64,000 bases of DNA from Octopus sinensis (lineage: Eukaryota): the NCBI RefSeq assembly GCF_006345805.1, contig NC_043004.1, positions 44,454,001 through 44,518,000 on the forward strand. The letters run 5' to 3'. The notes under the pieces were generated by a model. The model saw nothing but the letters and a program-made list of their open reading frames with translations, did not search any database and had not been told where the DNA came from. Made by a program: the position numbers and the translations under genes. Shown here in pieces: positions 4,631 to 58,357 of the stretch (its first letter is position 1; each line of letters begins with the position of its first letter).

Positions 4631-5049
4631 GGGACAAGTGTCTTCTACTATAGCCTCGAGCCGACCAAAGCCTTGTGAGTGGATTTGGTAGACGGAAACT
4701 GAAAGGAGCCCGTCGTATATATGTATATATATAATATAATATATATATATATATATAATATATATATATAATATATATATATGTTAGTTAGTTAGTTAGT
4801 TAATTTGGCTCAAAAGCAGATAGCAAGGCCATGTAGGGGGACATGGAGTTAAGTACAGGGTGGTGTTCATGTAAAGAGTTCAGGCCACTTGAGGTCCAGG
4901 GAGGCTTTGAACAAAGCGGTCGTCGGCATCTTCACCATCTCATCTGGCAGCTTGTTCCACGGATCCGCAACCCGGACGGAGAAAGCTCCTCTCCTTCGAT
5001 TGAGATGAAATCGTCGCAGGTAGAGCTTTTCGGAATGACCCCGCATATA

Positions 5050-7297: not shown

Positions 7298-7458
7298 CGA
7301 GGGAATAAGTAGATTAGATCGACTCCAGTGTTTGACTGATACATATTTTATCGACGCCGAAATGATGAAAGTCAACCTCGATGATATTTGAACTCAGATC
7401 GTGAAGACGAAATGCCGCTAAACATTTTGCACAACGTGCTAACGATTCTGCCAGCTCA
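7298..7458 (-). mobile_element. SINE family B, old copy
   Basis: Minus strand GAGCTGGCAGAATCGTTAGCACG..GAGTTCAAAT..GTCGATAAAA. Confidence 0.82.
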
Positions 7459-9059: not shown

Positions 9060-9270
9060 AGGCGGTGACCTAACAGAATCGTTAGCACGCCGAAAGAAAT
9101 GCTTAGCGGCATTTCGTCCGTCCTTAACATTCGGAGTTGAAATTCGCCCGAGGTCGACTCTACCTTTCAGCCTTTCAGGGTCGATAAAATAAAGTCGATT
9201 ATTGTGGTCGATCTAATCTGTTTCCCAACTCGAAATTGCTGGCCTTGTGCCAAAAACTAAAACCAATATA
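9060..9270 (+). mobile_element. SINE family B, tail type 1
   Basis: Full head and centre, then tail AAATTGCTGGCCTTGTGCCAAAA. Confidence 0.82.
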
Positions 9271-9489
9271 ATTCTAGGCTGGTCAGCTTTTGCACAAATC
9301 AGTGAAAAACTGGTTCTTGATTTCCATGTCAGACTGAATATGTTTCTCCTTAGCTCAGAATGCCTGTGGTTGTTAGTTATAGATGGTAGCAAATATGCTT
9401 GAAGTACTGTCTGTGGTGATCTCCCGATAAATTTCTTAGATAATACACATATTTATGTATACAAACTGGTTGAAATATTTCAATTATGC

Positions 9490-23689: not shown

Positions 23690-25368
23690 CATCCTAATAA
23701 AAAGCCAAACTACTAAAGCTAAAACTTACTGCACAATATCCTACGAAAACATCATGCATATGATATGTCAATATGTCTCTATAAGATGATTGTAGCAACA
23801 AGAAGATTATAATTCGGGCACAAACTGGGGAAAAGGAAAGGGATATATTGAGAATCTTCTAAATAAAATGGTACGGGAGAGAACAATAAAGAACTGCAGA
23901 AATTTGTCTGTGGTATGGCTGGACTTCTAAAATTCTTTGGGTGGAATGTTAAAGCACTGTGATTAACCGCTAGTATCTGCCATCTACCACCAAACCAAAG
24001 CCTGGTGCACCATACACTACTAAATGTCAGCTTTCAGGATAATAGCTTGAAGGTATTGATTTTTATTCTCCGATTAAACCGTATATCCTACCTGATCATT
24101 AAGCATAGTAGCCATGAGAATAATTCCAGTAAACTCTCTTACCTCTTTTTTTAACGACCTGCATTTATATGGGTCGAGTATGAAACAAATTGAGAAAGTA
24201 ACTGCAGCTCATAACACATTTCTCTGAAGACACTGGAATGAAATTTGATGAATTTAAGCATAAATATTTGGTGGTAAAACGTGGCAACCTTCAAAATATT
24301 AACCTTGAACAGCTTAAAAACACTGCATCTACTCACTGGTGAAAACACAGGGTGAAAACCTCATCTATGGTTTAATAAAGGGAAATCAAGAAAAAAATAC
24401 TTTAACAGATTTTTTTTTTAAATATGGTCTTCTCAACTCTCAATTTACAAGCATGTCTTCCGCAGTATATTTGCAGTGCCTATTTTCAAGCCCATATTTG
24501 GTCATCCAAATGGCAAATGCAGGGGCTTAACATAATTCACATTCGCAGTCTGTTTAGTCCAAGCATGGATGATGACTGCGGTCTTAAATCTGTATTGATG
24601 TAATGTGAAGTACGTTTTGTGACAATGAAGCAGCATTGGCAGCGCACGAACAGAGCATGGACTATTTCACTGAGAAGATCCTGCATGGGTATTTGAACGA
24701 AAGGTGCAAGTCATGGAAGAAATAGATCATATCAAAAGCTTGGCGTGGAGTACAGACAACTTTATGACATCACACTTGGAAGACTACCGCCATGCAATTT
24801 AGGAATAAGTGATTTCTAGCAAGTACCTACAGCATAATATACAACAGACATTAATCGAAAACAAATGTAGACTGTGCAAAATTAATAGTTAAGACATCAA
24901 TCACATCAATGCCAGCTAGAAGAGAAAGTCTTCTAGGTATTATGAGACATGATGCGGTGACGTGGACACTCTAGGACAGACCAAGAAAAGAGAAAATACC
25001 AGCAAAGTCGACTCTGATAGACCGGATGATTAAAATAACATTAGTAGGACTGAAATATTGTTTTCAAATTTTGGGGCGAGGCCAGAAATTTTGGTGGGAG
25101 AGAATATGTCAGTTACATCTAACTCTGCGCTCAACTGGTACTTATTTTATCGACTTCGAAGCGTTGAAAGGCAAAATCGGCCTCGGTGGAATTTGAACTC
25201 AGAACGTAAGAAGAGAACGTAAGAACCCAGAACGTAAGAAGAACTCAGAAGAGGGGCGAAATGCCACTAAGCTCTTTGCTACGCGTGCTAACGATTCGGC
25301 CAGCTCACCTCTTTTATGGTGGAACATGTATGTTAAAACAGCTTTTAAGCTCAAACACAACCAGCCAT
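23690..25368 (+). mobile_element. Highly decayed RLE-type (R4/Dong-like) LINE, interrupted by a SINE B copy
   Basis: RT remnant CRNLSVVWLDF (~23896-23930), knuckle remnant CRLCKIN..DINHI (~24866-24910), and WWNMYVKTAFKLKHNQP resuming after the SINE at 25317-25367. Confidence 0.65.
25060..25310 (-). mobile_element. SINE family B, tail type 1, inserted in the RLE remnant
   Basis: Reverse-complement head and centre; internal triplication of AGAACGTAAGA. Confidence 0.82.
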
Positions 25369-26140: not shown

Positions 26141-27713
26141 TCCTTAGTAGAAGGCTTGGTTGGATTTCCAAGTTTCTGATGCACCGTGGAAATCACAGTA
26201 GAAAGGAAAGGCGGTAGGATGTGAGGATGGGTTTCAGTAATAAATGGGTGAATAAAGAATCAAGATTTTTATAGAGAGAAGAAGCATCTAATTGCTTTGG
26301 CGGTCGAGGGAAAAGACAGACAAGATAAAGCACGGAAAGGAGGGAAGCATTAACAAACTGCCTTATAGGTAAAAGTAGCAGCGGTTGGAATAATAGAAAG
26401 AGAATGGAAGATGAGAGATAAAGAAATGAGAGAGAATAAGAGAGAATAGAAGGTCGAAGATCGTAGTTAACATCTTATTGTTGTCAAAGAAGAAACAGCG
26501 TTTCTTTAAGATGCAAGAAAATGTGTAGGCCGAGCGAGTTAAAGAGATGAGAAAACGAGACATGAGCTCGTAAAAATTATAAATCAGGAAGACAACGGGA
26601 AAAAAAAATTAAAGGATGAAACCAAAGTAAAAATGGGGGGGGGGGTAGTTGAAAAGTCTTTCGACTCGGTCATGCCATAGGTGTAAGAATTGGGAAACTT
26701 TAGGAAGAAGGAAAATCATTTTAATATTTTCCAAGGAACGAAAAATCGTTGTGATGTCTGCAGAAGAAACAAAAAAAGTATACAGCTCATTATTGCGCAA
26801 ATGATTGAAGAGTTTCACTGGTTATATGTACGCTGATTAGAAAGCTGACTTTCTTGTGGACTATGTTTTATGTTTTACGTAGAGAATATTAATTTGTGAG
26901 AATTCTAAAGCAATACAATAAAACATGCTACATCAGCCAACAACGGGATTCAAACAAAAGATCGATTGTTCACCGAGTGGCCTAGCTAATCTTACGATAC
27001 GACGAGAACAAAAAGAAAATACAATGTTTCCTTTCATATTTAAATACACCAGTGTTTTTATATTGTTACTATATTAATATTGAGGAAAGAAAAAACAAAA
27101 CAAGATTTGTCACCAATGAGAAAGAGGGAAGGAGTGAAAAACATAAGAAAAACAGAGAAGGATGGCGGGAACGGTGGGGGGAGAGACAGGAGAAGAATGA
27201 GAAGTAAGTCTTAAAAGAAAATTCCGTAAATATGTCTCCCGAGAAATATAGCATTTAGCAAGTAATTTAGATATATTGCAATATCCGACAACAGGGAATT
27301 AATAGGTAAATTGAGTAGAGACGTAGAATTTGAAGTTAAAATTCAATATGTTCATGAATGCTTATGTGTATGTGCTATGTATGAATTTACGTGTATGTGT
27401 ATGTAAGCATGCATTTACAATGAATTGCATTCGTTCTTCATGTCTGTATTAGAAACATGGAAAGGCAGCAATATCACAGCATAGAGTGCGGCGAGCTGGC
27501 AGAACCATTAGCACGCCGGGCGAAATGCGTAGCCGTATTTCGTCTGTCGCACATGTGTTCGTGAAGTAAGAATTGCTGTTTCGTGGTGTTAATATTGTTA
27601 ACAACTGTTGTTTCTTGTTAAACTGTTGAATAACTTAACTGTTGGAGTTTTCAATTGAAAACACTTAGTGCTTGTGGTAGCACGCGTTGTTCATTCCCCC
27701 TTTGGGGGGAAGA

Positions 27714-29237
27714 ATGTCGTCTAGCATGGAGCCTACCGTTGGAGCAGACATACTTGTTTCTCCTGTTGAGAGGAGGAAATACATGCCCGGCGAGGAGCCA
27801 ACTACAGACAAGGAAATAGGGGTTTCCCCCGCTACAAGAAGGAATAGCAGAGAGGATAATATATTTGATATTTTTGGAGATGTGTCTGAGAGCTCGTCAG
27901 AACTTTCACCAGAAGAGTTTCCGACTTTGCCAGAGAACAAAGGCATTGTGTCGAAGAGAATAATTGATGTGCCTAGCATCCAGATAGAACCAAAAAATGG
28001 AAAAAAAAGTTTTGCGTTGGCTGCTGGGGGTGGAACCCAGATACTGTCGACGAATAAAAGCGAAATTATGAAATACAGCAAAATGATGGAAATAAATGAC
28101 AACAGTGTGAAAATTGAACCTCCGCAAAAGTTATTACAGGAAGAAAAGCAAAAAACAATAATTTTTTCAAAACATATTGTCTACAAAATAGAAAAATTGA
28201 AAGAATGTCAGAAGAGAAAATAGAAAAGTGCTTAAAGCCAATATTGGGCGACGTAGTATTTCTGAGAAGAGGAAAAAAATTCGGAACGGTGGAAGTAAGG
28301 TTCACCAATAAAGAAATAGCACACAAGAACTCAGTGGAAACGTTGAAAACGAACGACGTGGAGTTAATACCCTATTATATGGGGATGAGGACGTCGCGAA
28401 TAAAAATTACAAGGGTCCCGCCAGAGGTCGAACCTATGTGGTTGTTGGCGGCAGTCCTAATCAAAGAGGTAGAAAAAATTACTCTCCTCCAGGCTACCGC
28501 TACGGAAAACCCACGCTGGGATGGTAAAACAATTAATCTTCTCATTCAAGCGGACCCTAAAATAATTCAAACAATTCCTGAGACAATTGAGGTAGGGGAG
28601 GAGAACCTCGTGGTGTTTGTTGAGGGCCGAAAACCTCGATGTTTTTTATGTGGTCAATTAGGCCACATTCGAAGGAACTGCAAGGAAAATGAAGAAGAGG
28701 AGGAAGAGGAGAAAAAAGACAAAGAGGAAGAAGATAAAGAAGAAACAGATGAGAAAAAAACAACAAACAAAAGAAAATACAACCAGCAACCCAGCCGAGA
28801 GCGGCGACTACTACAGAACAACGACCAAAAAAGACTGCCAGAAGAGAAAAAGAGAAAAAGGCATAATAGCCGTATACACTAAAGATACTGAGCTCATGAG
28901 AGACATTCAGCTCATAAAGACTGTAAAAAAAATTGATAACCTTTCAGAGGAATTTATCAATTACGACATATATGAAGTCTCAAATAAAACATATAGAATT
29001 CTACAAAATAAGTACAGAAAGACTGTATCTTCATTGAGATTAGATTTTAACAAGTCGATATTTCATGGATTACCAGCTCCGATCCCGCGAGAAAAGGAAA
29101 AGGTGGAGATTCCCCCTCCACCTGATAATTCTGTGTCGGTGGTGAGACGGGATTTTGACAAATCTATTTCCCAAGACCGTCCACCTCCGACCCTGATAAA
29201 AAAAGGTGGAGGGTCCCCCTCCACCGGACAATCCTAA
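27714..29237 (+). pseudogene. ORF1 (gag-like nucleic-acid-binding protein) of the Tx1-like LINE, split by 2 frameshifts
   Basis: ATG at 27714 (MSSSMEPT). Three overlapping ORFs (27687-28223, 28205-28882, 28689-29237) join into one protein with an RRM-like region (GTVEVRF..RIKITRVPPEV) and knuckle CFLCGQLGHIRRNC. Confidence 0.85.
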
Positions 29238-29252
29238 TTAAACAGGTAAGTG

Positions 29253-32200
29253 ATGGCTATTCACATTGGTTGTTTAAATGTTCATGGCCTGTTGTCAGCT
29301 GGAAGCAAGGACGCTTTCTGAATGACATCAGGTCGAGAATTTGGATGTAATTGTTGCAACGGAAACCCGGGTGAAGGGGCCAAGAGATCTGCTCCCCCTC
29401 CTGAACGGCTACGAGAAATACGTTTATCCGTCGGGCGGGAGGTGGGGGTGGGGTGTTGGTCCTACTAAAAAGAAACGGGTAGCCGAGAAAAAGTTGGTTT
29501 TTTTCTGACCCAGAAGGCAGGCTGGTCGTTCTCGACTTGACATTCAGTTGTGGCAAGACAATCAGGCTGGTCGCTATTTATGCACCAAACATTATTGGCC
29601 CGCAAACTGAATATTTTCGTGGCCTAGGAATTCCTAGCCACGTCGCATTCACTAGTAGTGTTAGGAGACTCTAATACAATATGTGCAGCACACACAGATT
29701 GTGTTGGCTCAAACTCGAACATGAACAGAAAATGTAACACAGGCTTTCGGGATCTGCTAAGTCAATTTCAGCTAGCAGATCCATATAGGTTGGAGCACCC
29801 GAACACTCCACAGTGGACGTGGTCAAATAGTGACGGGTCTACCAGAACATATCTAGATAGGATTTTAATTAGAGAAAAAGATAAGTCCATAGTTGAGTGT
29901 CCACAGTTTTTTCTAGTCAGCTACAGTGACCACAAGATGGTTACCTGTAAACTGACGGTAGATAAGTTGCATAGACAGGGATCTGGCTACTGGAAACTCA
30001 ATACGTCCCTTTTGGCGATTGAGGAGTACAGAAAGCGGATCAAGATGTTAATACAGAGGGCATTAACAGGTACCATCATTAATAACAAATGGTGGTACGC
30101 CCTAAAAAGAGCCATCAAATATGAGTCTATTAGGTTTAGCATAAGTTTAGCTAAGAAGGGACGTAAAATAGGAGATGGTCTAGTTAAGGAACTAGAAGAA
30201 GCCTGGAGGACTGGTAATACAGACCAAGCGAGGGTGAAAAGACTGGAGTTAAACCAGCATCTTGAAGCCCACCACATGGGAAGTATTACCAGAGCTAAGT
30301 TACGTGCAATGGGAAGTGAAGGAATCAAAGCCGCTGGATGGGCCCGAGTGGTGGAAGCTCGGCAAGGAAATAGTTCCTCTATTCGGTCTTTGACGAATCA
30401 AAATGGTGTCTTGATAAACGAACCCGAGAAAATGTGTGAGGTCTTTCGGGAGTACTTCGCCCAGCTGTTCGGGGGTGACGGCGGTCCTGGTGGTGGGAGA
30501 GCCCTCGAGGACTTTCTTACCGGGCTGCCGTGCCTCTCGGGGTCGGATGCGGAGTCTTGCGAAGGGCCAATCACACTTCAGGAGGTGATGGAGGCTTTGG
30601 CCGATTGTAAAGCGGGTAAGTCACCGGGACTTGATGGTCTTCCGTACGAGCTGTATAAATGTATGCCAGACTACTGACTGACGTGTACGCGAACTGGAAA
30701 CAGAATGGGTTTATCCCCAGATCTGTGCGCCGGGGAGTAGTGACGTTGGTCAGAAAGGACCCGGACAAGGGGGACGTTCTAGAGAATTTCAGGCCCATCA
30801 CTCTGTTAAACGCAGAAGTGAAGATTTTGGCCAAGGTTCTAGCAAAAAGGTTGGCGCGTGTCGCGAATGGTATAGTCGGGGAGGCACAGACATGTGCCAT
30901 CCCAGGCAGAACCATTCAGGATACCCTCCATCTTATTCGCTATACCATAGAGAGGTTTCGTAATAATCTGGCAAAGGTGGGGCATTGGTGCATTTGGACC
31001 AGTCTAAAGCTTTTGATAGGGTTGACCATCGATACCTAGCGACTGTACTTGCGCGGTTTGGCCTGGGCCTTGGCTTCCTCAGGTGGTTTATCGCTTTGTA
31101 CCACAACATTGACTCGATAGTTCGGGCGAACGGTTTCCTTTCGAAGCCGTTCTGCATCAGACGCTCGGTTCGTCAAGGATGTCCGTTTCACCACTTTTGT
31201 ATGTGATGGCTCTCGAGCCATTACTGCAAAGGTTGAGTGGCATCCCGAGAGAACCAGGACTAGAGGAGTTTGTTACGGCTTTCGCGGATGATATCACTAT
31301 CAGTGTAACCACAGTGGCACACCTACGTGAAGTAGGTAAGACTATTGAGGCTTACGAGGAGGTAGCAGGAGCAAAGATTAACCGGGAAAAGTCGGTCGGC
31401 TTGCAGCTCGGCACCTGGGTTGGCAAGTCGATGCCTTCAGACAGTGTTGTTAGGCGCTGGACGGAGGGACCGGTTAAGTTGCTGGGAGTCTGGTTTGGAC
31501 CAGGCCTCCAGATAGAGAAGAACTGGACGGAGGTATTGAGCAGGGTGTCTGCAGTAGTCAAGACCTGGTCTTGGCGGTGGCTATCCCTGAAAGGGAGGGC
31601 GGAAGTGGCCAATGTGTTTATCGCATCGGTCATTACCTACCGCCTGACTGTCGTGCCCTGTCCGGATTCGTGGTTGATCAGGTTGGAGAGACAGCTCTTT
31701 CGCTTTTTGTGGAAGGGCAGGTCGCCACTTGTGAAACGCTCTGTCTGCTGTCAAAAGCCTTTAAATGGAGGTTTAGGGATGCCTTGGTTAATGATGCGCA
31801 GACATGCGTTGAGGTTGAGGCACCTCTGGATTCTCCTGGATAGTGAACGGGTGTGGTCTCCGCTGGCCAGACAAATGTTCCCTGAGTCCAAGAGTTTTTG
31901 CGAACAGGAAGCCTGGTGTTCTCGTAGACCGAGGTCGAGTGAGTGGCATAAAGAGTGCCGTAAGGCCCTCTTGCTGTTCCGACGCTCGGGCAACGCCAGC
32001 GGTGGGGGTTCCACACGGATTTTATATAGTGGGTTGGTAGGGTCTGAATGCGACGATGGCCTGGGGTCGACTCTAGGTCTCGGATTTATTCAACTGGACA
32101 GCTTGTTTCATCGTACATTCGGGTTGAGACGTTGGACAACTTCCAAAAGTCCTTAACCTGGCAATGCTACAGAGGTGCCTTGCCCGTTTGGATAAGCTCG

Positions 32201-32630
32201 CAAGACATGGTAAACGTCAGTCGCCGACCTGTCCAAGATGCGGGGGGGACAGGGAAACCGTCCCTCACGTTATTGTTCAGTGTCCGGAGATAACTGAAAT
32301 GTGGGCTTATGCTGAACATCTGTTGTCCGGCGAAGGAAGAGTACGGCTGTCGACTGAGTCAATTATAAAAATTGACCCACCGGGAGTTCTAACGAACGAA
32401 GGTAAGAATTGTTTTCTCACGGTTGTAGCAATAGCAAAAGAGGCTGTATGGAATACTAGGATAAAAGGAATTAAGACAGGCAACTTTATCTCTGGTGACA
32501 ATTTACGATCCTTTTTTCTTTTCATTTGAAAAGGAAACTGTGGCTGGAGAAGAGGTGTCTGTCAGAGTGTACGTTCCAAAAGAGATGGAAGTATGTTGCA
32601 CGAGTGTTGTGCGTGCAAGGAACCGTGTGA
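29253..32630 (+). pseudogene. ORF2 (APE endonuclease + reverse transcriptase + C-terminal Cys/His motif) of the Tx1-like LINE, multiple frameshifts
   Basis: APE motifs: MAIHIGCLNVHG, LDVIVATET, IRLVAIYAPN, LGDSN, TYLDRILI, SDHKMV. RT motifs: KSPGLDGLPYE, NFRPITLLN, LDQSKAFDRVDH, VRQGCP, FADDIT, GAKINREKS. C-terminal CPRC..HVIVQC, then KRW. Stop TGA at 32628-32630 after manual frame joining. Confidence 0.93.
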
Positions 32631-34034
32631 ATAGACGAGGAAAAAAAAAAAAAAAAATAAAAAGGTATCAGCGGTAGATCGGGGCTTGTGGGATCGGAGC
32701 GTAACTTGATCATCGCTTCATTTGTATTGTTTTTGTACTGTGTATTCCATTCGATTTTTATGTATTGTATTTTATTTTTGATGTCACATTTATGTAAAAT
32801 CATATCGATTCACTGATCCCATCAGTTGTACTGTCCATATCTATGTTTGGCCCCCGGTGGGCAATAAAGAAATTCGTATTTCGTCTGCCGTTACGTTCTG
32901 AGTTCAAATTCCGCCGAGGTCGACTTTGCCTTTATCCTTTCGGGGTCGATAAATTAAGTACCAGTTACGCACTGGGGTCGATGTAATCGACTTAATCCGT
33001 TTGTTTGTCCTTGGTTGTCCCCTCTATGTTTAGCCCCTTGTGTGTAGTAAATAAATAAATATCACAGCTTAGTATAATGACAACTGAAAAAAACACATTT
33101 CACACACACACATACATACATACACCCTACGCGCACACACACACACACACACAAGTAAATACGTCGACACATAGTATAAGGGTGAAAAAAATCAGTCACT
33201 ATATTGAGCATTATTTATATGTATATGCAGATACTTCCATATTGATTCGATTGCTACTCCGAGTTTTCTACAGACATTTATTGCTTGAGTAATGACACAG
33301 AGATAACTCTTGACCGGAAGTATGACTGTAATTCGGTATGGTTACTCTCTATCACTTGATATTTATATCACTTCATATTTATCAATGCCGATCAATGTAA
33401 CGAAAACTCCCTGGTCAAAGTTTATTCGTCGAAAAAGGAGGATACTCGGCGTGGATCATAAAGATTGGTATGGGTAATTTGTATAGTTTCGCACGTGATA
33501 TTCAAGCAGCTCCAAATTCTCCAGAAGAAGTGGTGTGTCTGCGATGGTGGTTATCTAAAACACTGGACTTATTTTTTAACATCACGGGCTGTTTCATTAT
33601 AGGCAACTATTATATGATTGCAATATACGGTTCTATAACCAGATAAAATGAAAGAAGAAAACACTGTGCACCATTTACGAGACCAAAAGGAATACATATG
33701 TCACTTATATCGTACCTTAAATCATTAGTAATCAGCCACGTACTGTAGAATAGATGGAATTCAAAGGTGTTATTAATGCTTTATATTTCCTTCCTACAAG
33801 GACAAATAGTTATATATACCTATATGTATATTTCGTATCAAGTTATAAAAATGTGTGATAGTAAATCATTCGGAGTAAGTAACTTACTATCTTTTACCGG
33901 AGGATATTAAATAATTCAACTAGTAAGAGTGGACTATTCTTTAGTTTCACATAAAAGATTTTCTATACCTGTCTATATACCACGGAATTTTAATCAAACG
34001 CTTATGATCCATATATGTATATATACATATAAAT

Positions 34035-39992: not shown

Positions 39993-40080
39993 ATGCCCTG
40001 AGATCTAATCTCGACTCGAAATTTGCCTTTCATCTTTCGAGATCGATAAATAAAGCACCAGTGATGTACTCGTGGCCAAT
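39993..40080 (+). mobile_element. SINE family B central fragment
   Basis: TTTGCCTTTCATCTTTCGAGATCGATAAATAAAGCACCAG. Confidence 0.6.
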
Positions 40081-40719
40081 ATTCTTTTTTACTCATTTTC
40101 TTTTCTTGTTTTTCAGCCCTTTTGGTTTCCTGGGAGACAACAATTATAACCAAACCTAGAAAAGACGCGCTACGCCATATGTGTTTTTTTTCTTTTTTCC
40201 TTGAGATTAATTGTTTGCATTCAGACTTTCAAAAATTCTGAAAAATGGAAAAGATAAAAACAAAAACACCAACAGCTACATTTTTTTTCGTGTTTACAGA
40301 ATATTTAGTCATATTCTCAACTACTGCTTATTACTTGGCAAGCCTACTCATAGTAAGTAAACAGCAGTAAATAAAATATTTCATATCACAAATAAGAAAG
40401 AAGTCTGGACCTAACACATGAACACACACACACACACACACACACACTTTTGTGCACGCACAGTTGCCATTATATATAATTTAGTAATGAACTGCGTCTA
40501 TTTAACAATATATTTCAATTGTAATCATATGATAATATTAAGCAAATTCTGACAATATTGGAATAAACAACAATTAGTCAGTACTGCATGGAACGAATTT
40601 AAAGAAGACAGATATAAACAAAATTGCTTTTTAGAATAAAATGTAATAAAATTTCAAAATTAAATTCCGTGGATAATACATAGAAACACGCATACATACA
40701 CACGCATACACAGGTGTGT

Positions 40720-40730
40720 GTATATATATA

Positions 40731-40765
<35 letters not shown>

Positions 40766-40775
40766 TAATATACAG

Positions 40776-40806
<31 letters not shown>

Positions 40807-40952
40807 TATATATATAGAATATTAATATAAATATAGTATATATATAGGTATATATATATATATGATATATATATTATATGTAGATATAGATAAATATATA
40901 TATAGATATGTATATATATAAATATATATATATATATGTATATATATTATAA

Positions 40953-40984
<32 letters not shown>

Positions 40985-40988
40985 GTAT

Positions 40989-41024
<36 letters not shown>

Positions 41025-41237
41025 GATAAATATAGATATATAGTATAGATATATATGGATATATATATATGTAGATATATATATGTATATAATATATATA
41101 TATATATTATATTATATATATAAATATATAGATACTTATCTATATATAATATATATATATATATATATAAATAGATCTATATATATGATTATATATATAA
41201 TATGTATTATATATATATATATAAAGATATATAGATA

Positions 41238-41277
<40 letters not shown>

Positions 41278-41291
41278 TATATGTATAGATC

Positions 41292-41384
<93 letters not shown>

Positions 41385-41555
41385 TAAGATATAATATATA
41401 TATATATATAGGATCTATATGTATATAGATATATACATATATATACATATATATATATTATATATTACGTATATAATATTTATATATATATAATATATAT
41501 GTATATAAATATATAATATTATAATATTACGTTATAGATATATTTATATATATAT

Positions 41556-41600
<45 letters not shown>

Positions 41601-41934
41601 CGTATATATATATGTATTATATATATATTATATATGATAATATAAAAGATATATATATATATGTATATATATAGTATATATATATTTATATATATATATA
41701 TAGATATATATATAAATATATATATATCTATATGTATATATATATACATATATAGGTTATATATATACATATATATATATTTATATATATATACGTAATA
41801 TATATTGATATATATATATTATATATATAACAATATATATATAGTATATATATATACATATATATACATATATATAGTACTATATATACATATATACATA
41901 TATATATATTTATATATATATATACGTATATATA

Positions 41935-41978
<44 letters not shown>

Positions 41979-42097
41979 ATATATATTTTATATAATATAT
42001 ATATATTTATATATATATATATATAGATTTATATATATATATATATATTTATATATATAGATATATATTTATTATATTATATATATATATATAAGAG

Positions 42098-42128
<31 letters not shown>

Positions 42129-42198
42129 CATATATATACATATATAGATATTATATATATATACGTATATATATATATATTAATATATATATTATATT

Positions 42199-42274
<76 letters not shown>

Positions 42275-42372
42275 CATATATATACATATATATATTATAA
42301 ATATATACGTAATATATATTTATTATTTATATATATATACGTATATATATATTTATATATATATATATATTT

Positions 42373-42406
<34 letters not shown>

Positions 42407-42418
42407 TATATATAATAA

Positions 42419-42449
<31 letters not shown>

Positions 42450-42941
42450 CATATATATACATATATATATATTTATATATATACGTATATATATATTAAT
42501 ATATACGTATATATATACATATATATAGGTAACATATACATATATATATACATATATATATAGTTATATATATACATATATATAGGTATACATATACATA
42601 TATATATACATATATATATAGTTATATATATACATATATATAGGTATACATATACATATATATTACATATATATATAGTTATATAATACCTATATATAGG
42701 TATACATATACATATATATATACATATATAATATTTATATATATACAATAATATATGTATATAATATATACATATATATACATATATATATATTTATATA
42801 TATACGTATATATATATTATATATATCGTATATATATACATATATATAGGTATACATATACATATATATATACATATATATATTTATATATATACATAAT
42901 ATAGGTATAATATACATATATATATACATATATAACATATA

Positions 42942-42973
<32 letters not shown>

Positions 42974-43110
42974 GTATGTATATATATATTCAGAGACAGA
43001 GAGTGAGAGAGATATATGTATACAGTTATACATAAATACATACATATATATCTATATATATATATGTATGCATATATATATTATATATATAATATATATA
43101 CACACTACAT
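40720..43110. repeat. ~2.4-kb degenerate (TA)n array
   Basis: Almost purely A/T alternation with sparse G/C interruptions. Confidence 0.98.
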
Positions 43111-43425
43111 ACATATACATATATATATATATATGCGTGTGTGTGTATATAAATATATATGTGTGGTGTGTATAATAAACATACGAACATACATACTACA
43201 TATATACGTACACACATACACACATATATACGTACACACATACACACATAGACGCATACATACATATAGCTGTTTGTTCCATACTTATAACAGTCTATAG
43301 TTTAACATAATTGATTTGAGAATATTAACTTCTTTAGAATTGTAGATATCTATATATCTATATTATATGTTAAAACTCTTCCATGTAATTTTCTTCTCAA
43401 AAATCTGGCATTCATAACATTTTTC

Positions 43426-43486
<61 letters not shown>

Positions 43487-43899
43487 TTCGGTTTCTTTGT
43501 ATTTATTTGCACAAACACTTGTTTGTTCGGTCGTTCGTTTGTCAAAGGTGCCAAAATACCTTAATTGAAACTCATCATCGTAAATAACATTGTTCAACTT
43601 CAATAATGTATTAGAAATTATTTCGAGGCTTCCTTTCTCAGGCGAACAAGATTAAGGCAATATTTACTAACGAGACCTTTCGTGAGAAATGTTCATAGTA
43701 GGACAAAGCGTTGTTTTCAGTATAATAACCTTCTAGACTAGCATAACGAATCATTTATTGATCTTATTAAGTAAACTGTACAAACCACAAGTAGTAATTC
43801 AAGTTTTGTATTGGAGAATGATTATTATAGGTAATCCTCCTTATCTATTTGCTTATGTGTATATATCTTTCTCTCCTACTCTTTATATTTATATGTATG

Positions 43900-43937
<38 letters not shown>

Positions 43938-44949
43938 CATGTGTGTGTGCATATATATAAAGAGGGAGAGAGGGAGAGAGAGATACATATATATATACGC
44001 ATATTAAACATTCATACATGTATATATATATATATATCTAAGTGCATGTAATATATAATATACATATATATATATTTGTATATATATTATATAGATATAT
44101 ATGTATGTATTACAAACATACATATATATATATACATATATATATAATATATATACATATGTATATATATATATATACATATGTATATATATATATTTAT
44201 ATGTATAATATATATATATATATATTATAGTTATAGTATATATATATACATACATACATGCATTTATAGATCAATCCAGTCCAGAACCACACCCCACACC
44301 ACCACACCACATCACACCATCCCACACCACATCACACCATCCCACACCACTCAACACACTAGCACTGACCACTTCCCAGCACCCGCACCATACACCCTCA
44401 TCCTCACGCCCATACAACATCATCTACACACCCACACATTACAGACGCACTCACTCACACATGCACATACCACACACGTCTAAATCACTAGACCCTATCC
44501 ACACACACACACCCTTACACATTCACACACGCTTGTGCACCTTGGTTTTGCGATCACCAATACGTTAGTGTCTCCCCTTCTTTCTACCTCTCCTGTCAAA
44601 CCTTTTTTTTACCAACCAGCCACCATGCTTGATGGCTAAATATAGACCCATTAAGAAAATGAGACCCAAAATACAACCCATGAAATGGCCCTATGTTTCC
44701 TTTGTAACAATAAAATCATTCAAAATTTCATCCAAGCACGCAACCAAAATAACAATCAGATTCCAGACGTTAACTAACGGAAAAAAATATGTAGCAAACA
44801 TATATACACTTGTACATATATTTCTACACACAGTCATGACCCAGAAACAAAGCCATCTTATAGGAAATTCCGTATTAAATATCCTTCTACAAGAACATTA
44901 TCGAAACATCACGCCATTTACTGATCACTTGATAATGAACTGGAAGAAT

Positions 44950-45385
44950 TGTTACTATGCCGAGTAAAATGCTTGACGGTATTTCGTTCGTCTTTACTCT
45001 CTGAGATCAAATTCTACTGAGGTCGACTTTGCCCATTACATTTTGGTGGTCGATTAAATACGTAATATTCAAGCACTGGAGCCGATGTGATTGACTTAGC
45101 CCCCTCCCCCTACCTTGCTGACCTGGTGCTAAAATATGATATTAATATTTATTGGTCACATAAAATAGGAGTGTCGTGTAACATTTCATAAAAATGCCGC
45201 CTGGTGAGCTGTCAGAATCGTTAATACGCAGGTCAAAATGCTTAGCGAAATTTCGTTCCTCTTTACATTGTGTTCCACCACGATCGAGTTTGCCTTTCAA
45301 ACTTTCGTGGTCGATAAAATAAGCTCTGCGGTCTATGTATTCAACTAGCTCACTCCCACGTACTTTCTGGCCAAAATTTGAAATA
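44950..45385 (+). mobile_element. Two adjacent old SINE family B copies (44950-45145, 45205-45385)
   Basis: Each has AAATGCTT..ATTTCGTT, GACTTTGCC/GAGTTTGCC and GTCGAT modules; the first ends in a type-1-like tail. Confidence 0.72.
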
Positions 45386-45854
45386 TATAATTACTGAACA
45401 CGTGTTTTCATAATCTTGCGCCTTCGTAGTTTCATATAAGGATACGCCACGTTATTTTCCAAGTAATATTTCAGAAGAATATTTGATATAAGTTTTCACT
45501 AATATGTTATAATTTTTGTAAGATATTTACATTCAAACTTTTCTATAGTCGTGAAGAGCAGATTGATGTTTATATCAAAACTTTTTTATATCTCATCTAT
45601 CTCATGAATATGCCGAACGGGAAACTTGGAGTAGCGATTCAGAGAGGCTCCTGCTAAGAATAGTAACAGACACAAGCACTTACGATCCCCCCACCTCTCT
45701 CTCTCTCTCTCTTTCTCTCTCTCACACACACACACACACACCGGAAACAAACATACACATGCATTCACAAGCACACCTACAGATAGAAACATATGCTCCT
45801 TATACACCCATACATATATACATATATTAATATGTGTATGTATATGTATATGTA

Positions 45855-53281: not shown

Positions 53282-53503
53282 ATAATGGTTTCAAATTTTG
53301 GCACAAGTTTTGAAACTTCGGTAGAGGGGATAAGTCGTTTACATTGACCTCAGTACTCAACTGGTACTTAGTTTATCGACGCCAAAAAAGAAATGGCAAA
53401 GTCGACTTCACCGTAATTTGAAGCCAGAACATGAAGACGGAAGAAATACCGCTTAGTATTTCAATTCGCTTTGCATCCTAACGACTCTGCTGGCTCACCG
53501 CCT
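53282..53503 (-). mobile_element. SINE family B, tail type 1
   Basis: Minus strand AAGGCGGTGAGCCAGCAGAGTCGTTAG..GTCGACTTTGCC..CTTGTGCCAAAATTTGAAACCATTAT. Confidence 0.8.
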
Positions 53504-54050
53504 TAATAGCTTGTATAATAGAAATAATATTTAGTAATTTTTTCTTTCTATGCGATCAGTTATCATATGATCAATGGCATAGTACTGCTCCGCGGGTCAG
53601 TTGTTGGGGAGCACTGGGGAAACATTCGTTGGATGTCTCCGCTCTTACACGATGTTAATGGTGGCAGCATGGGTGAAAAGTTGACCAGTTCGCTTTACAC
53701 TCACAAGGTCACTGGTTCAATCCCACTGCGTGGCGTCTAGAATGAGTGTCTTTAGATTATTACATCGGGTTGACTTATGTCTTTTGAGGGAAAATATGTA
53801 GAGGAAGTCGTATAGAATCTGATCGTATGCGTTGTATGCATTGTACTTATAATTCAGTAGTAAATGCTTTCAACTAAAAACAAATATAGTTAATGGTGTA
53901 GGTATTTATGGAATACTCAGCCAGTTCAAAGCTAATTCAATAAAGGGGCAATTGATCATCGAAACAGGCGGAGTTCCATTTAATTATTCAGAATTAAGAT
54001 GCTTTTATTATTCTAACACATTTATTCACCTCAGTTGATAAGGAAAAATA

Positions 54051-54446
54051 ACAGGGGTGGCTGTGTGGTAGGTAGCTTGCTTACCAACCACATAATTCCG
54101 GGTTCAGTCCCATGCGTGGTACCTTGGGCAAGTGTCTTCTACTATAGCCTCGGGCCGAACAAAGCTTTGTGAGTGGATTTGGTAGACGGAAACTGAAAGA
54201 AGCCCGTCGTATATATGTATATATATGTGTGTGTGTGTATTTGTGTGTCTGTGTCTGTCCCCCAACATCGCTGGACAACCGATGCAGCTGTGTTTACGTG
54301 CCCGTAACTTGGCGGTTCGGCAAAAGAGACCGACACAATAAGTACTAAACTTACAAAGAATAAGTCCTGGGGGAAATTTGCTCGACTAAAGGCATGCTCC
54401 AGTATGGCCGCAGTCAAATGACTGAAACAAGTAAAAGATAAAAGTA
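54051..54446 (+). mobile_element. SINE family A
   Basis: Full module order. Confidence 0.9.
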
Positions 54447-54499
54447 TATAGCTCCTCCCAAATATTCGAAGTTTGTTTGGATTAAGATTTATTTTAATC

Positions 54500-54670: not shown

Positions 54671-54946
54671 TCCTATATTTTTATTATAATTAGACTTCAG
54701 CCAATATATCTAATCCTATCGGGACGTTAAAATTCATGCGAGTATATGATATAAATTTGCATATATGGAGTTGAGCACTTATGATGCTAATGTATTTACA
54801 TATAAACAACGGGATATGTTATAGGCATGTGTATGTTAAACCTATTTCAGAGCCGGGCCTGCAATTTAAACACATACTAAAGTGCAATTACAAATATTGG
54901 TACATATATACTACATACGTGTATAAATATATATATATATATATAC

Positions 54947-54988
<42 letters not shown>

Positions 54989-54989
54989 A

Positions 54990-57630
54990 TACTTTACTTT
55001 GATACTTTGATAGGTTTCGGCCATTATTGGCCCAGGCCATGTCTAACTTATAGCACCACCTGGTGAAGTCTTTCAAGTCAAATTTGGGCACTATGGCCCA
55101 CTCAAGTAGAGAGTTATTGTTTACAGAGACATATCCGGGTGTAGGGGGTTTATCCGGGATTTCTTGAAGGAATCTGTCCAAAGACTTCTTGAACCCTATA
55201 GGGTCAGTTTCTGTCTTAATGTGTTTTGGTGTAATGTTAAAGAGAGCGGGGCCAATTGAGGTGAAATAATTGTGCCGTATTGTTGTTATGAGATGAGAGT
55301 GCGATTTTTGTTTTGGGCGGATGGCACGGGGCCCAAGCCTTGGATGTACCTTAAAGGTGATGCCAACATCGTTTGGGCAATGCTGATGGAATATTTTCCA
55401 CATCATGCAGATGATGTAGCGCTCACGACGACGTTGGAGAGAATAGAGTTTTAGCTTTTCTAGTCGACCCCAATAGTCGAGGCCTGTCATGCCATCTATC
55501 TTTTTTGTGATTGCCCTTTGAGGTGCTTCCTTTTTATGATACCTTGTATTGTGTGGGGAGACCACAGTGGACAACAGTATTCAGGTGGGGTCGGGCAAAA
55601 GTGGAGAAGAGAAGGATTATGGTGTGGATATCTCTCGACTGGAAAGTTCTGAGAATCCAGGAACACATTCAACTTTGGTGTTTATATGAGTGGCCCAGCT
55701 TATGTTTTGTCCACAATTACTCCCAAGTCTCTGATGTTGTTGGACGCCGCGAGAGTTTCACCTGAAGGAAGGGAGTATGGGAGTTTCAGGGCATCCTCTT
55801 TTCCAAAGTGGATTAGCTCAAATTTATCCTCGTTCAGCAGCATATTGTTTTTTTTTCTGCCCATTGGATAACCCAGTAGATCTGACTGAAGGCATGTCCG
55901 GTCACTCGCCTCATTTTTGACCTTCTGTAGCTTGGAGTCATCTGCAAATATTTTTATGTTGCTGTGCTTGATGATGTCATTAATGTCAATTAATGTAAAT
56001 GATGAAAAGAAGTGGGCCCAGCACAGTGCCTTGCGGAACGCCACTACTGACTTTGGCTGGGCTTGATTTTACCCCTTCAACTACAACATGTTGAGATCTG
56101 TCTGTCAGGAAACACTTGATCCATTTCAGTAACTTTCCAGAGACACCAATGTTGGATATTTTTTTCAATAGGATCTTGTGATCGACCCTGTCGAAGGCCT
56201 TACTGAAATCAAGGTAGATGACATCGGTGTTGGAGCCCTCTCCCAAAGCTCTCAAAATGTCCTCAAAGTGATGCAGGAGCTGCGTTAGGCAGTCCCTTCC
56301 ATTACGGAACCCATGTTGGTTGGAGATCAGCCGTCTGTTGCTTTCCAGAAATTGGGTTATTCGAGATCTCACCACCCTCTCAAATACCTTGATGATATGA
56401 GAGGTGAGTAAGATCGGACGGTAATTCACTGCAAGGGACTTGTTTCCCTTTTTGAAAACTGGGACAACAGACTGGGACAGAAGGTTTTTTGGAATATAGC
56501 CAGCATCCAGTGAGTTTCTCCACAGATTAGCAAGGGGAGATGCAAGTTGGTGTCGACACACCTTCAGGACACAAGCAGGGAACCTATCGGGGCCTACTGC
56601 TGAATTGTGTTTTATTTCGTTTATCGCCGCTAGACATCAGGGTCACTAAACGTTATGTCCGATATAGTGTGTTGGGGGTTGACATCACTGATACAGCCCA
56701 GATCGGCTATATCAGGATTGCTGAAAACAGAGCAGTAATTGTTTCTGCAGTAATCTCGGCCATGGATTGGCATTATCTTGGAGAGTCCAGTTTCGTCAAT
56801 TAGAGGGCCTACAGTGGAGACAGTGACCCTGCGTTTCCTCGCAAATGAAAAGAAGACTTTGGGGTTGAGTTTGAATTTTTCAATGGCCCACTTCTCCTCA
56901 GCTGATCTTGGTTATTGATGAGGGTCTTCATGCATTGTTGGAGGTTATATTTTTTGGATTCAAGCAGTGCGATAGCCGTCGAATGTGTGTGTTCTGTTGG
57001 CAGTACTTTTTTTGTTAATTTTTTTGTTTGTTCTTTTTATTTTTCTGATAATGGTTTTTCTGTTTTGGGGATTCTGCAGTTTTGTTCACAGGTCTTGGTG
57101 GGGAGTGTTTTGCACATATGTCTGTGACGGTGTCTACAAAGATCTGCCAATGTTTTATGTTGGTGGAGATGTGTGTATGTGTAAAGGACCAGTCAACATG
57201 TGATAGCGCATTGCTGATTGCATCCCAGTTGGCATTATGGAGATCCATGTTGTCAAATGGGTGGGCTGGAGGAGGTCACTAGGATTAGCTTTCGGCTGGT
57301 GGAATTTCATGTTACAGAGAACCATGTCATGGTCTGAAAGAAGGGTTTTTCACTGTAACGTTATGTATAGTGTTAGTGTGGTTACTAAACACTAGGTCAA
57401 AATGTTCTGATGTCTTGTTGGTGCAAGGACAAGTGGGACAAGAAAACTCATTCGTAAAGTCGAAAAGTGACTCTGCTGCTTCTTGTCAGCGGTTGAGGCG
57501 GGAGTGCTTGGTTTCAACAAAACAGTTTGTAGTCCAGTCAACACAGGGTAGATTGAAGTCTCCCATCATGAGTATGTTGCTAGAATGGCACTGTTGAATA
57601 AAGCACTTAATGCTGTTGAGGCATTTTTAA
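54990..57630 (-). mobile_element. 5'-truncated CR1-group LINE (end of APE + RT), frameshifted
   Basis: Minus-strand motifs ILMMGDFN, SDH, SAVGPD, NYRPILLTS, NQHGFR, YLDFSKAFDRVDH, SGVPQGTVLGPLLF, IFADDSKL, LYSLQRRRER, FKKSLDRFL. 3' end in short tandem repeats (ATCAAAGT/AAAGT). (TA)n on both sides. Confidence 0.92.
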
Positions 57631-58254: not shown

Positions 58255-58357
58255 GTTCAGTCCCACTGCGTGGCACCTTGGGCAAGTGTCTTCTACTATA
58301 GCCGCGGGCCGAACAAAGCCTTGTGAGTGGATTTGGTAGACGGAAAGAAACCTGTCT
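58255..58357 (+). mobile_element. SINE family A fragment (B box to microsatellite)
   Basis: GTTCAGTCCCACTGCGTGGCACCTTGGGCAAGTGTCTTC..GGTAGACGGAAA. Confidence 0.85.

What the first reader, a model, noticed from the sequence alone, without database searches (positions are those of the whole stretch)
32800..33057. The host SINE's 3' tail matches the LINE's 3' end, and differs from the tail of other family B copies
Seen: LINE 32832-32873 (TGTCCATATCTATGTTTGGCCCCCGGTGGGCAATAAAGAAAT) aligns to SINE 33016-33056 (TGTCCCCTCTATGTTTAGCCCCTTGTGTGTAGTAAATAAAT) at 32/42 nt by hand, with weaker similarity just upstream. Family B copies at 9060, 9490, 25060 and 53282 share head and centre but end in an unrelated tail (AAATTGCTGGCCTTGTGCCAAAA..GAAACCATTAT). 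Established: SINEs borrow 3' tails from the LINE whose RT mobilises them; mammalian L1 needs only poly(A). Inference: a subfamily swapped tails to this Tx1-like LINE, which ends without poly(A) and may recognise its tail stringently. Combined with the nesting, the LINE would amplify its own target sites.
Basis: partly seen in the sequence, partly recalled or inferred. Interest (0 to 1): 0.8.

Follow-up and report, generated by a model that had tools for sequence, protein, structure and literature searches.

The report
Octopod SINE borrowing a LINE's tail
A short parasitic repeat (SINE) in this octopus-like genome ends in the same ~45-60-base tail as an L1-type LINE, and the same tail sits on abundant SINEs in the argonaut. 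This is the classic way a SINE hijacks a LINE's copying machinery, here with an unusual LINE group as partner.

Summary
LINE 32832-32873 and SINE 33016-33056 match 32/42, above every shuffle and random-window control. A profile built only from 3' ends of LINE relatives in other species finds just two sites in the 64-kb window: this LINE's end (E 8e-6) and this SINE's end (E 0.02).

The last ~42 nt of the LINE are a conserved island. They are 72-81% identical between octopod relatives whose remaining 3'UTR aligns at only 46-56%. The motif also persists in a relative with 52-62% ORF2 identity.

In Argonauta hians, about 45 copies of this tail lie in 64 kb, on at least two SINE types and on several LINE copies. 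So tail sharing is a family-level feature, not a one-off chimera.

The host SINE is a family B element (89% to the B consensus up to 32994) with a different tail. A 15-bp target duplication (14/15) flanks the whole unit.

Four points are not supported or not shown:
- The stem-loop is only a weak 4-bp hairpin.
- The Tx1 assignment rests on L1-superfamily evidence only.
- The direction of the tail swap is unknown.
- The idea that the LINE amplifies its own targets fails: none of 5 other LINE copies sits in a SINE.

Verdict: a new member of a known kind (a SINE/LINE pair with a shared 3' tail). It is moderately interesting because L1-clade partners are rare.

The parts
27470..27484 (+). Left target-site duplication of the host SINE (AATATCACAGCATAG)
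   Evidence: Matches 33058-33072 at 14/15. It flanks the whole head + core + LINE-type tail unit.
27485..27546 (+). Host SINE head (family B), cut off by the LINE insertion
   Evidence: Part of the 167-nt stretch that is 89% identical to the family B consensus. Other B copies were found by blastn.
27534..27546 (+). Left target-site duplication of the LINE (CGTATTTCGTCTG), lying inside the SINE
   Evidence: Identical 13-mer at 32875-32887. The SINE sequence continues on either side of the two copies.
27547..32874 (+). Nested L1-superfamily LINE. ORF1 is 28205-28882 with a CCHC knuckle. ORF2 is frameshifted into pieces (about 29230-32529) with RT and C-terminal zf-RVT. The 3'UTR is 32530-32873, with no poly(A).
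   Evidence: ORFs. Pfam zf-CCHC, RVT_1 and zf-RVT. PDB matches are human L1 ORF2p only. Relatives in O. sinensis, A. hians and metagenomes.
32832..32873 (+). LINE 3' tail: conserved terminal module TGTCC..TCTATGTTTGG(C)CCC..GTGG..AATAAAGAAAT
   Evidence: 81% and 72% identical to the tails of the O. sinensis and A. hians relatives, while the rest of the 3'UTR aligns at 46-56%. Hit by the foreign LINE-only HMM at E 8.4e-6.
32850..32862 (+). Candidate 4-bp hairpin in the LINE tail (GCCC / CCGGU / GGGC)
   Evidence: RNAalifold consensus. Pair counts show one pair with GC/CG/AU types and a covariation score of 0.272 against 0.094 in shuffles, reached by 3/500. There is no thermodynamic signal.
32875..32887 (+). 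Right target-site duplication of the LINE
   Evidence: Identical to 27534-27546.
32888..32994 (+). Host SINE B-box region and central conserved domain (GGGGTCGATAAATTAAGTACCAG...GTAATCGACTTA)
   Evidence: Aligned to the family B consensus, with homology ending at 32994. The same domain occurs in A. hians SINEs and an O. sinensis SINE.
32995..33057 (+). Host SINE LINE-type tail module. The last 42 nt (33016-33057) match the LINE ends. It finishes in (AAAT)3.
   Evidence: 32/42 to the window LINE, 35/42 to the O. sinensis LINE, 33/42 to the A. hians LINE. HMM E 0.023. It aligns through the junction to the A. hians SINE consensus.
33058..33072 (+). Right target-site duplication of the host SINE (AATATCACAGCTTAG)
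   Evidence: 14/15 to 27470-27484.
53282..53510 (-). Example of a family B copy with the majority tail, for comparison. Others lie at about 9062-9280(+), 25062-25309(-), 44945-45140(+), 45203-45390(+) and 7300-7457(-).
   Evidence: blastn and MAFFT alignment. The majority-tail consensus is not significantly similar to the LINE tails.

Best explanation
The host element is a family B SINE: a tRNA-type head plus a Deu/Nin-DC-like central domain. Its last ~45-60 nt are a copy of the 3' terminal module of an L1-superfamily LINE lineage that is present across octopods.

The inferred mechanism is the standard one for 'stringent' LINE/SINE pairs. The Pol III SINE transcript presents the LINE's 3' tail. 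That tail is the conserved sequence ...TCTATGTTYGGCCCTTGTGGCTAATAAAGAAAT, possibly with a small GGCC/CUUGU/GGCU hairpin. The LINE's ORF2 protein binds the tail in trans and starts target-primed reverse transcription on it. The result is a copy flanked by a 13-17-bp target duplication, like the LINE's own.

The LINE nested in this SINE belongs to the same lineage but is not necessarily the exact donor. The nesting itself looks incidental.

Shown here:
- the sequence relationship;
- its conservation in LINE relatives;
- its family-level presence on SINEs in Argonauta;
- target duplications around whole SINE units.

Inferred, not shown:
- recognition of the tail by the reverse transcriptase;
- the role of the hairpin;
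- activity of this subfamily in the window's own genome.
For: Similarity:
- 32/42 identity, terminus to terminus, beyond all shuffle and genomic controls.
- A profile of 8 LINE 3' ends from other species finds only the LINE end and the SINE end in 64 kb.

Conservation in LINEs:
- The tail is a conserved island. It is 81% and 72% identical between the window LINE and the O. sinensis and A. hians LINEs, against 46-56% for the rest of the 3'UTR.
- It is still recognisable in L004, whose ORF2 is only 52-62% identical to the window's.

Family-level sharing in A. hians:
- About 45 tail hits lie in 64 kb.
- They sit on a ~245-bp SINE with the same central domain (14 copies aligned) and on a ~157-bp SINE with a sub-threshold tRNA-like head.
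- They also sit on 4 near full-length LINE copies plus 5'-truncated fragments.
- One A. hians SINE copy read here (ending at L017:12161) has a 17-bp target duplication, 15/17.

The host SINE:
- It equals the B consensus at 89% up to 32994, then switches to the tail.
- It aligns through the junction to the A. hians SINE.
- One 15-bp duplication (14/15) flanks the whole unit.
- The SINE tail shares the C-G version of the one covarying hairpin pair with the window LINE.

Established knowledge: SINEs recruit LINE reverse transcriptase through a shared 3' tail (Kajikawa and Okada 2002, cited in PMC4494074; review PMC3747384).
Against: - Only one copy with this architecture lies in the window and none in the 20-kb O. 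sinensis locus. A subfamily in this genome is therefore not shown.
- The structural signal is weak. The consensus hairpin is -2 kcal/mol and has one covarying pair, and 90-nt folds have z-scores from -1.05 to +0.97.
- The conserved AATAAA could reflect polyadenylation of the LINE mRNA rather than reverse transcriptase binding.
- There are no expression or activity data.
- The LINE copy in the window is frameshifted and dead.
Confidence: 0.78

Rival explanations
1. One-off chimera. During a single reverse-transcription event the LINE enzyme copied the 3' end of a LINE RNA and then switched template to a family B SINE RNA. That would give one hybrid insertion with no descendants in this genome.
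For: Only one such copy lies in 64 kb of window plus 20 kb of O. sinensis. The single target duplication around the unit fits this reading as well.
Against: A. hians has the same architecture (central domain, then a ~60-nt tail module) in many copies. The host aligns to that family across the junction. The host tail differs from every LINE tail seen (62-83%), as expected for an old family member or an old event.
Confidence: 0.12
2. Two separate insertions. A heavily 5'-truncated LINE copy (~45-60 bp) landed at the end of a 3'-truncated SINE, so the SINE never carried this tail.
For: Very short 5'-truncated LINE 3' ends do exist in this lineage, for example L017:4740-4850 and L018:12284-12649.
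Against: The 15-bp duplication (14/15) brackets head + core + tail as one unit. No separate duplication flanks the tail alone. The same junction recurs in A. hians SINEs.
Confidence: 0.04
3. Chance or convergent resemblance of two A/T-rich ends that contain a poly(A)-signal-like AATAAA.
For: The shared stretch is short (42 nt), and part of it (AATAAAGAAAT / AGTAAATAAAT) is low in complexity.
Against: 0/2000 shuffles and 0/2976 genomic windows reach the score. The G+C-rich core TCTATGTTT.G.CCC..GTG carries most of the match. The foreign LINE profile picks exactly this site. A. hians SINEs give family-level confirmation.
Confidence: 0.02
4. Gene conversion after insertion. The nested LINE's 3' end, about 140 bp upstream, overwrote the SINE's original tail.
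For: The two sequences are close together and in the same orientation.
Against: The SINE tail is closer to the O. sinensis (35/42) and A. hians (33/42) LINE tails than to the adjacent LINE (32/42). It carries TGTCCCCTCTATG, where the adjacent LINE has TGTCCATATCTATG. The upstream part of the tail module (32995-33015) matches A. hians SINE tails, not the adjacent LINE.
Confidence: 0.02

Closest known systems
Stringent-type LINE/SINE pairs with a shared 3' tail, e.g. eel UnaL2/UnaSINE1 (L2 clade) and the many CR1-, L2- and RTE-tailed tRNA SINEs (reviewed in PMC3747384)
   Same: The SINE's last tens of nucleotides copy the LINE's 3' end. The LINE end is conserved and lacks poly(A). Relatives end in short tandem units ((ATT)n, (ATCT)n; (AAAT)3 on the host SINE), as UnaL2 ends in (TGTAA)n. 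Target duplications are of similar size for SINE and LINE.
   Different: The partner here is an L1-superfamily LINE, not CR1, L2 or RTE. The candidate hairpin is only 4 bp and poorly supported, whereas those systems have clear stem-loops. No retrotransposition assay exists.
L1-clade SINE/LINE pairs: maize ZmSINE2/3 with LINE1-1_ZM, and Chlamydomonas SINEX-3_CR with L1-1_CR (PMC3472496, PMC3747384)
   Same: An L1-type LINE (APE + RT + C-terminal zinc-binding region) has a conserved 3' end that is shared with SINEs.
   Different: Those are in green plants and an alga, and they end in poly(A). This one is in animals (octopods) and has no poly(A). [quoted passage not shown]
Crocodilian SINEU mobilised by Tx1-Mar LINEs (PMC4494074)
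   Same: A proposed partnership between SINEs and Tx1-group LINEs.
   Different: SINEU elements have poly(A) tails. That partnership was inferred from a shared target preference (Mariner-N4_AMi), not from a shared 3' tail. Here the shared tail is the evidence and a shared target is not seen.
Mosaic or module-exchange evolution of SINEs with conserved central domains (Deu/Nin-DC, V, CORE, Meta; PMC4758252, PMC11481361)
   Same: One head/core family (B) carries alternative tails. One tail is shared by different SINE types (the long and short SINEs of A. hians).
   Different: The bivalve study reports four LINE partner clades and does not mention Tx1. An octopod pair with an L1-type LINE was not found in the papers searched.

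Membership tests
SINE/LINE pair with shared 3' tail (stringent type) | The SINE 3' end is homologous to the 3' end of a LINE in the same genome, terminus to terminus | tested here: met
   32/42, with 0/2000 shuffles reaching the score. The foreign LINE profile hits only the two termini.
SINE/LINE pair with shared 3' tail (stringent type) | The similarity holds at family or consensus level, not in one copy only | tested here: met
   Met in A. hians: the consensus of 14 SINE copies, a second SINE type, and several LINE copies. In the window's own genome only one copy was available.
SINE/LINE pair with shared 3' tail (stringent type) | The LINE 3' end is conserved among diverged LINE relatives | tested here: met
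   Tail 72-81% identical against 46-56% for the rest of the 3'UTR. The motif is kept in L004, at 52-62% ORF2 identity.
SINE/LINE pair with shared 3' tail (stringent type) | A conserved stem-loop in the shared tail | tested here: inconclusive
   A 4-bp hairpin with one covarying pair (3/500 shuffles). The consensus energy is -2 kcal/mol and fold z-scores are near 0.
SINE/LINE pair with shared 3' tail (stringent type) | The tail is required for trans-mobilisation by the LINE protein | not testable with these tools
   Needs a retrotransposition assay.
L1 superfamily LINE | ORF2 with an APE endonuclease, RT and a C-terminal Cys-His region; ORF1 present | tested here: met
   RVT_1 and zf-RVT in ORF2 pieces and zf-CCHC in ORF1. 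Exo_endo_phos is recorded for relatives. The only PDB matches are human L1 ORF2p, E 1e-8.
Tx1 clade (L1-Tx1) | The RT domain groups with Tx1 references in a phylogeny (RTclass1) | not testable with these tools
   No Tx1 reference sequence or named Tx1 hit was obtained. Indirect evidence only: octopus repeat annotations list L1-Tx1 families and no plain L1 among recently active LINEs (PMC13282606).
Tx1 clade (L1-Tx1) | Target-sequence-specific insertion | tested here: inconclusive
   The window copy sits in a SINE. The 5 other copies do not. Two different A. hians LINE families share (ATCT)n plus a 179-bp 3' flank at 98.9%. That hints at targeting, but of another sequence.
tRNA-derived SINE with Deu/Nin-DC-like central domain | A Pol III tRNA-like head with A and B boxes | tested here: inconclusive
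   No ARAGORN or Rfam tRNA call for family B. A B-box-like GAGTTCAAATTCC is visible. The short A. hians SINE gets sub-threshold Rfam tRNA matches of 18-22 bits in all three tandem units.
tRNA-derived SINE with Deu/Nin-DC-like central domain | The central domain is homologous to the published Deu/Nin-DC consensus | not tested
   No reference sequence was at hand. The assignment rests on my recollection of the motif and on papers stating that octopus SINEs are mainly tRNA-Deu and tRNA-Core (PMC8967140).
tRNA-derived SINE with Deu/Nin-DC-like central domain | Dispersed copies with target-site duplications | tested here: met
   About 10 copies in the window. The host copy has a 15-bp duplication. 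One A. hians copy has a 17-bp duplication.

The most novel reading that the evidence does not exclude
An animal L1/Tx1-group LINE lineage uses stringent, sequence-specific 3'-tail recognition. It has kept the same ~42-nt tail across octopods (Octopus and Argonauta, and a more distant metagenomic relative). It has served as the engine for several SINE families, including the very abundant SINEs of Argonauta. This would be the first animal counterpart of the rare plant and algal L1-tail SINE pairs. It would give a testable case for the proposal that stringent recognition is the ancestral state of the L1 clade.
Probability: 0.4. Interest if true: 0.6.

Novelty: new member of a known kind. Interest (0 to 1): 0.45.

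Why it matters
SINEs make up roughly a tenth of octopus genomes (11.6% in O. vulgaris, PMC13282606) and are the hallmark of the octopod repeat expansion. The papers I could search do not say which LINEs drive them.

This finding names a concrete partner lineage for at least one SINE tail type. It also shows the same tail on dozens of SINE copies, of at least two types, in the 64 kb of Argonauta sampled.

L1-clade LINEs are the textbook 'relaxed' type that needs only poly(A). [quoted passage not shown] An animal L1-type lineage with a conserved, poly(A)-less tail shared with SINEs therefore bears on how 3'-end recognition evolved in this clade.

In practice, the tail motif is a handle for classifying the hundreds of 'unclassified SINE' families in octopus annotations. 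It can also help date bursts of SINE and LINE activity.

Tried and rejected
1. Pattern scans for the tail or the SINE core:
- IMG/VR: 0 hits.
- GTDB genomes: 0 hits.
- JGI metagenomes: 10 hits. Six were one unrelated repeat at the end of a different LINE (L006-L012), and the rest looked like chance. The scan did not recover L004's own contig, although its tail fits the pattern.

2. ENA hit P0074 (locus L016) comes from an organism without this SINE and gave nothing.

3. An exact look-up of the window's ORF1 found no record, so the species stays unidentified.

4. A full-text search for the SINE core sequence found 0 papers.

5. Thermodynamic folding of six 90-nt tails gave no signal.

6. I asked whether the majority B tail is a diverged version of the same LINE tail. 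It shares GGCC-TTGTG-CC. It resembles L004's tail by eye (24/31), but only at a borderline level in the shuffle test (41/2000, before correcting for four comparisons). Neither HMM detects it. I left this open and did not claim it.

7. A resemblance between 54870-54830(-) and the majority tail is compatible with chance and was dropped.

8. The second LINE in the window (about 54990-57250, minus strand) is unrelated at protein level to the nested LINE. I did not test it as the donor of the majority tail.

9. Three protein searches returned no hit named Tx1, so the clade could not be fixed.

Full report
WHAT IS THERE. The window is repeat-rich, A+T-rich animal DNA. Its closest retrievable relatives are octopod sequences, from Octopus sinensis and Argonauta hians.

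A 232-bp SINE lies at 27485-27546 plus 32888-33057. It is flanked by a 15-bp target duplication, AATATCACAGC[A/T]TAG, at 27470-27484 and 33058-33072 (14/15 identical).

A 5.3-kb LINE (27547-32874, + strand) splits the SINE. The LINE has its own 13-bp duplication, CGTATTTCGTCTG, at 27534-27546 and 32875-32887. Its features are:
- ORF1 with a CCHC knuckle (28205-28882);
- a frameshifted ORF2 with RVT_1 and a C-terminal zf-RVT;
- human L1 ORF2p as the only solved-structure match;
- a 344-nt 3'UTR that ends ...GGCAATAAAGAAAT directly against the duplication, with no poly(A).

CHECK OF THE OBSERVATION.

The best local alignment between the LINE's last 200 nt and the SINE tail scores 33. None of 2000 dinucleotide shuffles of either partner reached it, and none of 2976 random 200-mers from the window did.

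The window holds no other copy of the tail.

About ten other copies of the same SINE family (B) are present. Six of them carry a different tail...AAATTGCTGGCCTTGTGCCAAAATTTGAAACCATTAT. That tail is not significantly similar to the window or O. sinensis LINE tails.

The host SINE is 89% identical to the B consensus over 167 nt. The homology stops abruptly at 32994, after ...GTAATCGACTTA.

EVIDENCE FROM ELSEWHERE: THE LINE TAIL. Protein searches with ORF2 found relatives whose DNA I could fetch.
- O. sinensis (L001; about 69-72% nt identity to the window LINE over the aligned 3' part)...TGTCCCCCTCTATGTTTGGGCCCTTGTGGCTAATAAAGAAAT.
- A. hians (L017)...CGTCCCCTCTATGTTTTTGCCCTTGTGGCTAATAAAAGAAATA(ATT)4.
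- A metagenomic relative (L004; ORF2 only 52-62% identical)...TCGTCCTTAATGTTTCCGGGCCCTTGTGGCCAATAAAAGAAATC(ATT)n.
- Further A. hians copies end in the same motif, followed by nothing or by (ATCT)n.

Between species the last 42 nt are 72-81% identical. The rest of the 3'UTR aligns at only 46-56%. The tail is therefore a conserved island.

The host SINE tail matches the O. sinensis LINE at 35/42 and the A. hians LINE at 33/42. Both are better than its match to the LINE nested inside it.

An HMM made only from eight foreign LINE ends, run over the whole window, returns two hits. They are the window LINE's end (E 8.4e-6) and the host SINE's end (E 0.023). The next hit has E 4.3.

EVIDENCE FROM ELSEWHERE: FAMILY LEVEL. 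I fetched 64 kb of A. hians DNA in three loci. A tail profile built from the 15 LINE and SINE tails of alignment A2 finds about 45 tails there. It finds two in the window and one in the O. sinensis locus. The A. hians tails end several kinds of element:
- a ~245-bp SINE with the same central domain as family B. Fourteen copies were aligned. The consensus ends ...GGTATCGACTTTCCCTGTCCTCTGTCATGTCTTCGTCTGTCCTTCTATGTTCGGCCCTTGTGGCTAATAGAGAAATC;
- a ~157-bp SINE whose head gets sub-threshold tRNA matches and is joined almost directly to the tail;
- the LINE copies themselves, and very short 5'-truncated LINE ends.

The A. hians SINE copy ending at L017:12161 has a 17-bp duplication, 15/17 identical.

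The host SINE aligns to the A. hians SINE consensus from the B-box region through the core/tail junction to the end, at 73%.

This removes most of the weight from a one-off chimera or a separately inserted LINE fragment. The single duplication that brackets the whole host unit points the same way.

STRUCTURE. RNAalifold proposes one 4-bp hairpin, (G)GCC / CUUGU / GGC(U). It lies at 32850-32862 in the LINE and 33033-33045 in the SINE. Its consensus energy is -2 kcal/mol.

On ten tails, 82.5% of cells pair. One pair occurs as G-C (6), C-G (2: the window LINE and the host SINE) and A-U (1). The covariation score is 0.272 against 0.094 in shuffles (3/500), and it is higher than in all slid registers.

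Ninety-nucleotide folds of six tails are no more stable than shuffles, with z between -1.05 and +0.97.

So there is a hint of a small conserved hairpin, but no demonstrated stem-loop. The conservation is mainly in primary sequence.

WHAT IS NOT SUPPORTED.
1. Target amplification. Five other LINE copies (L001, L017, L018, two in L019) have no SINE at their 3' junction. Family B covers only about 4% of the window. The nesting is thus a single event with no sign of preference.
2. The Tx1 label. L1-superfamily membership is supported, but no Tx1 reference or named hit could be obtained. The label is plausible because octopus annotations report L1-Tx1 families as the active L1-type LINEs (PMC13282606).
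3. Direction of the swap. The outgroup A. hians carries the LINE-type tail, so the majority B tail may be the derived one.
4. A live subfamily in this genome. Only one copy was seen in 84 kb of Octopus-type DNA.

COMPARISON WITH WHAT IS KNOWN. Shared 3' tails between SINEs and their partner LINEs are textbook, and their function was shown for eel UnaL2/UnaSINE1 (PMC3747384).

L1-clade partners are the exception. [quoted passage not shown]

Crocodilian SINEU was assigned to Tx1-Mar from a shared target preference. SINEU elements have poly(A) tails (PMC4494074).

The cephalopod repeat papers I read list tRNA-Deu and tRNA-Core SINEs and L1-Tx1 LINEs. The word 'tail' occurs in neither, and 'partner' does not occur in the O. 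vulgaris paper, the only one searched for it.

I could not consult Repbase or Dfam, so prior curation of this pair cannot be excluded.

VERDICT. The central inference holds and extends to family level across octopods: the SINE carries the 3' tail of this LINE lineage, which is evidence of a stringent-type partnership. The add-ons do not hold up as stated (Tx1 label, stem-loop, direction of the swap, self-amplifying targets). The finding is a new member of a known kind and is of moderate interest, because the partner belongs to the L1 superfamily in an animal.

Noticed in passing
L019:12729-12965 and L019:18797-19074 (A. hians): Two different LINE families of this lineage have bodies only 67-70% identical. 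Each ends in the shared tail (86% identical over 59 nt), then (ATCT)n, then the same 179-bp flank at 98.9% identity. This suggests insertion into a repeated target, or gene conversion, rather than simple duplication.
   Followed up: partly
L017:4900-5357 (A. hians): Three head-to-tail copies of a ~157-bp SINE: a head with sub-threshold tRNA matches joined almost directly to the LINE-type tail. They directly follow a 5'-truncated LINE 3' end (4740-4850) that finishes in about 20 ATT units.
   Followed up: partly
L018:12224-12649 (A. hians): A near full-length LINE ends in a variant tail...GTCAGCCAGGTGGCTAAGAAAGAAAT. The hairpin survives, with an A-U closing pair and a 4-nt loop. A second, ~360-bp 5'-truncated copy of the LINE 3'UTR with the standard tail follows it directly.
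   Followed up: no
window 9233-9262, 25062-25100(-), 53282-53320(-); compare L004:1990-2025: The majority family B tail (GGCCTTGTGCCAAAATTTGAAACCATTAT) shares GGCC-TTGTG-CC and GAAA-CATTAT with the tail of the distant LINE relative L004, which ends in (ATT)n. The match is about 24/31 by eye and borderline in the shuffle test (41/2000). It might be a diverged tail of the same LINE lineage.
   Followed up: partly
window about 54990-57250, minus strand: A second, unrelated LINE. RVT_1 lies in ORF 55986-56561. The C-terminal piece carries a ...LYSLQRRRERYIICMMWKIF... motif that looks CR1/L2-like from memory. It runs into a (TA)n tract at 54925-55000. It shows no protein similarity to the nested LINE.
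   Followed up: partly
window 32643-32660: A run of about 17 A inside the LINE 3'UTR, roughly 210 nt upstream of the true 3' end. It is absent at the corresponding place in the O. sinensis relative.
   Followed up: no
window 40001-44000: A 4-kb stretch with only 15-17% G+C, far below the 26-51% of the rest of the window.
   Followed up: no
window 7180-7300(-) and 9260-9420(+): Two family B copies (7457- and 9062+) are followed by the same ~100-nt non-SINE sequence (...ATTCTAG.TGGTCAGCTTTTGCACAAATCA.TGAAA...). They are in inverted orientation about 1.6 kb apart, so they belong to a larger duplicated or composite unit.
   Followed up: no
window 54040-54460(-) and 58305-58330(-): A different SINE-like repeat family (...CTTTGTTCGGCCCGAGGCTATAGTAGAAGACACTTGCCCAAGGT...) occurs at least twice. 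Its TTGTTCGGCCC gave weak, non-significant tail-profile hits.
   Followed up: no
L006-L009, L011, L012 (JGI metagenome contigs): A repeat from an unidentified eukaryote ends ...TGTATGTTTTCTACCCTTGTGGTGAATAAAGATGT(AT)n. It lies at the 3' end of a LINE with no detectable similarity to this ORF2. The motif could form a UACC/CUUGU/GGUG hairpin. This is either chance or a wider distribution of the tail motif.
   Followed up: partly
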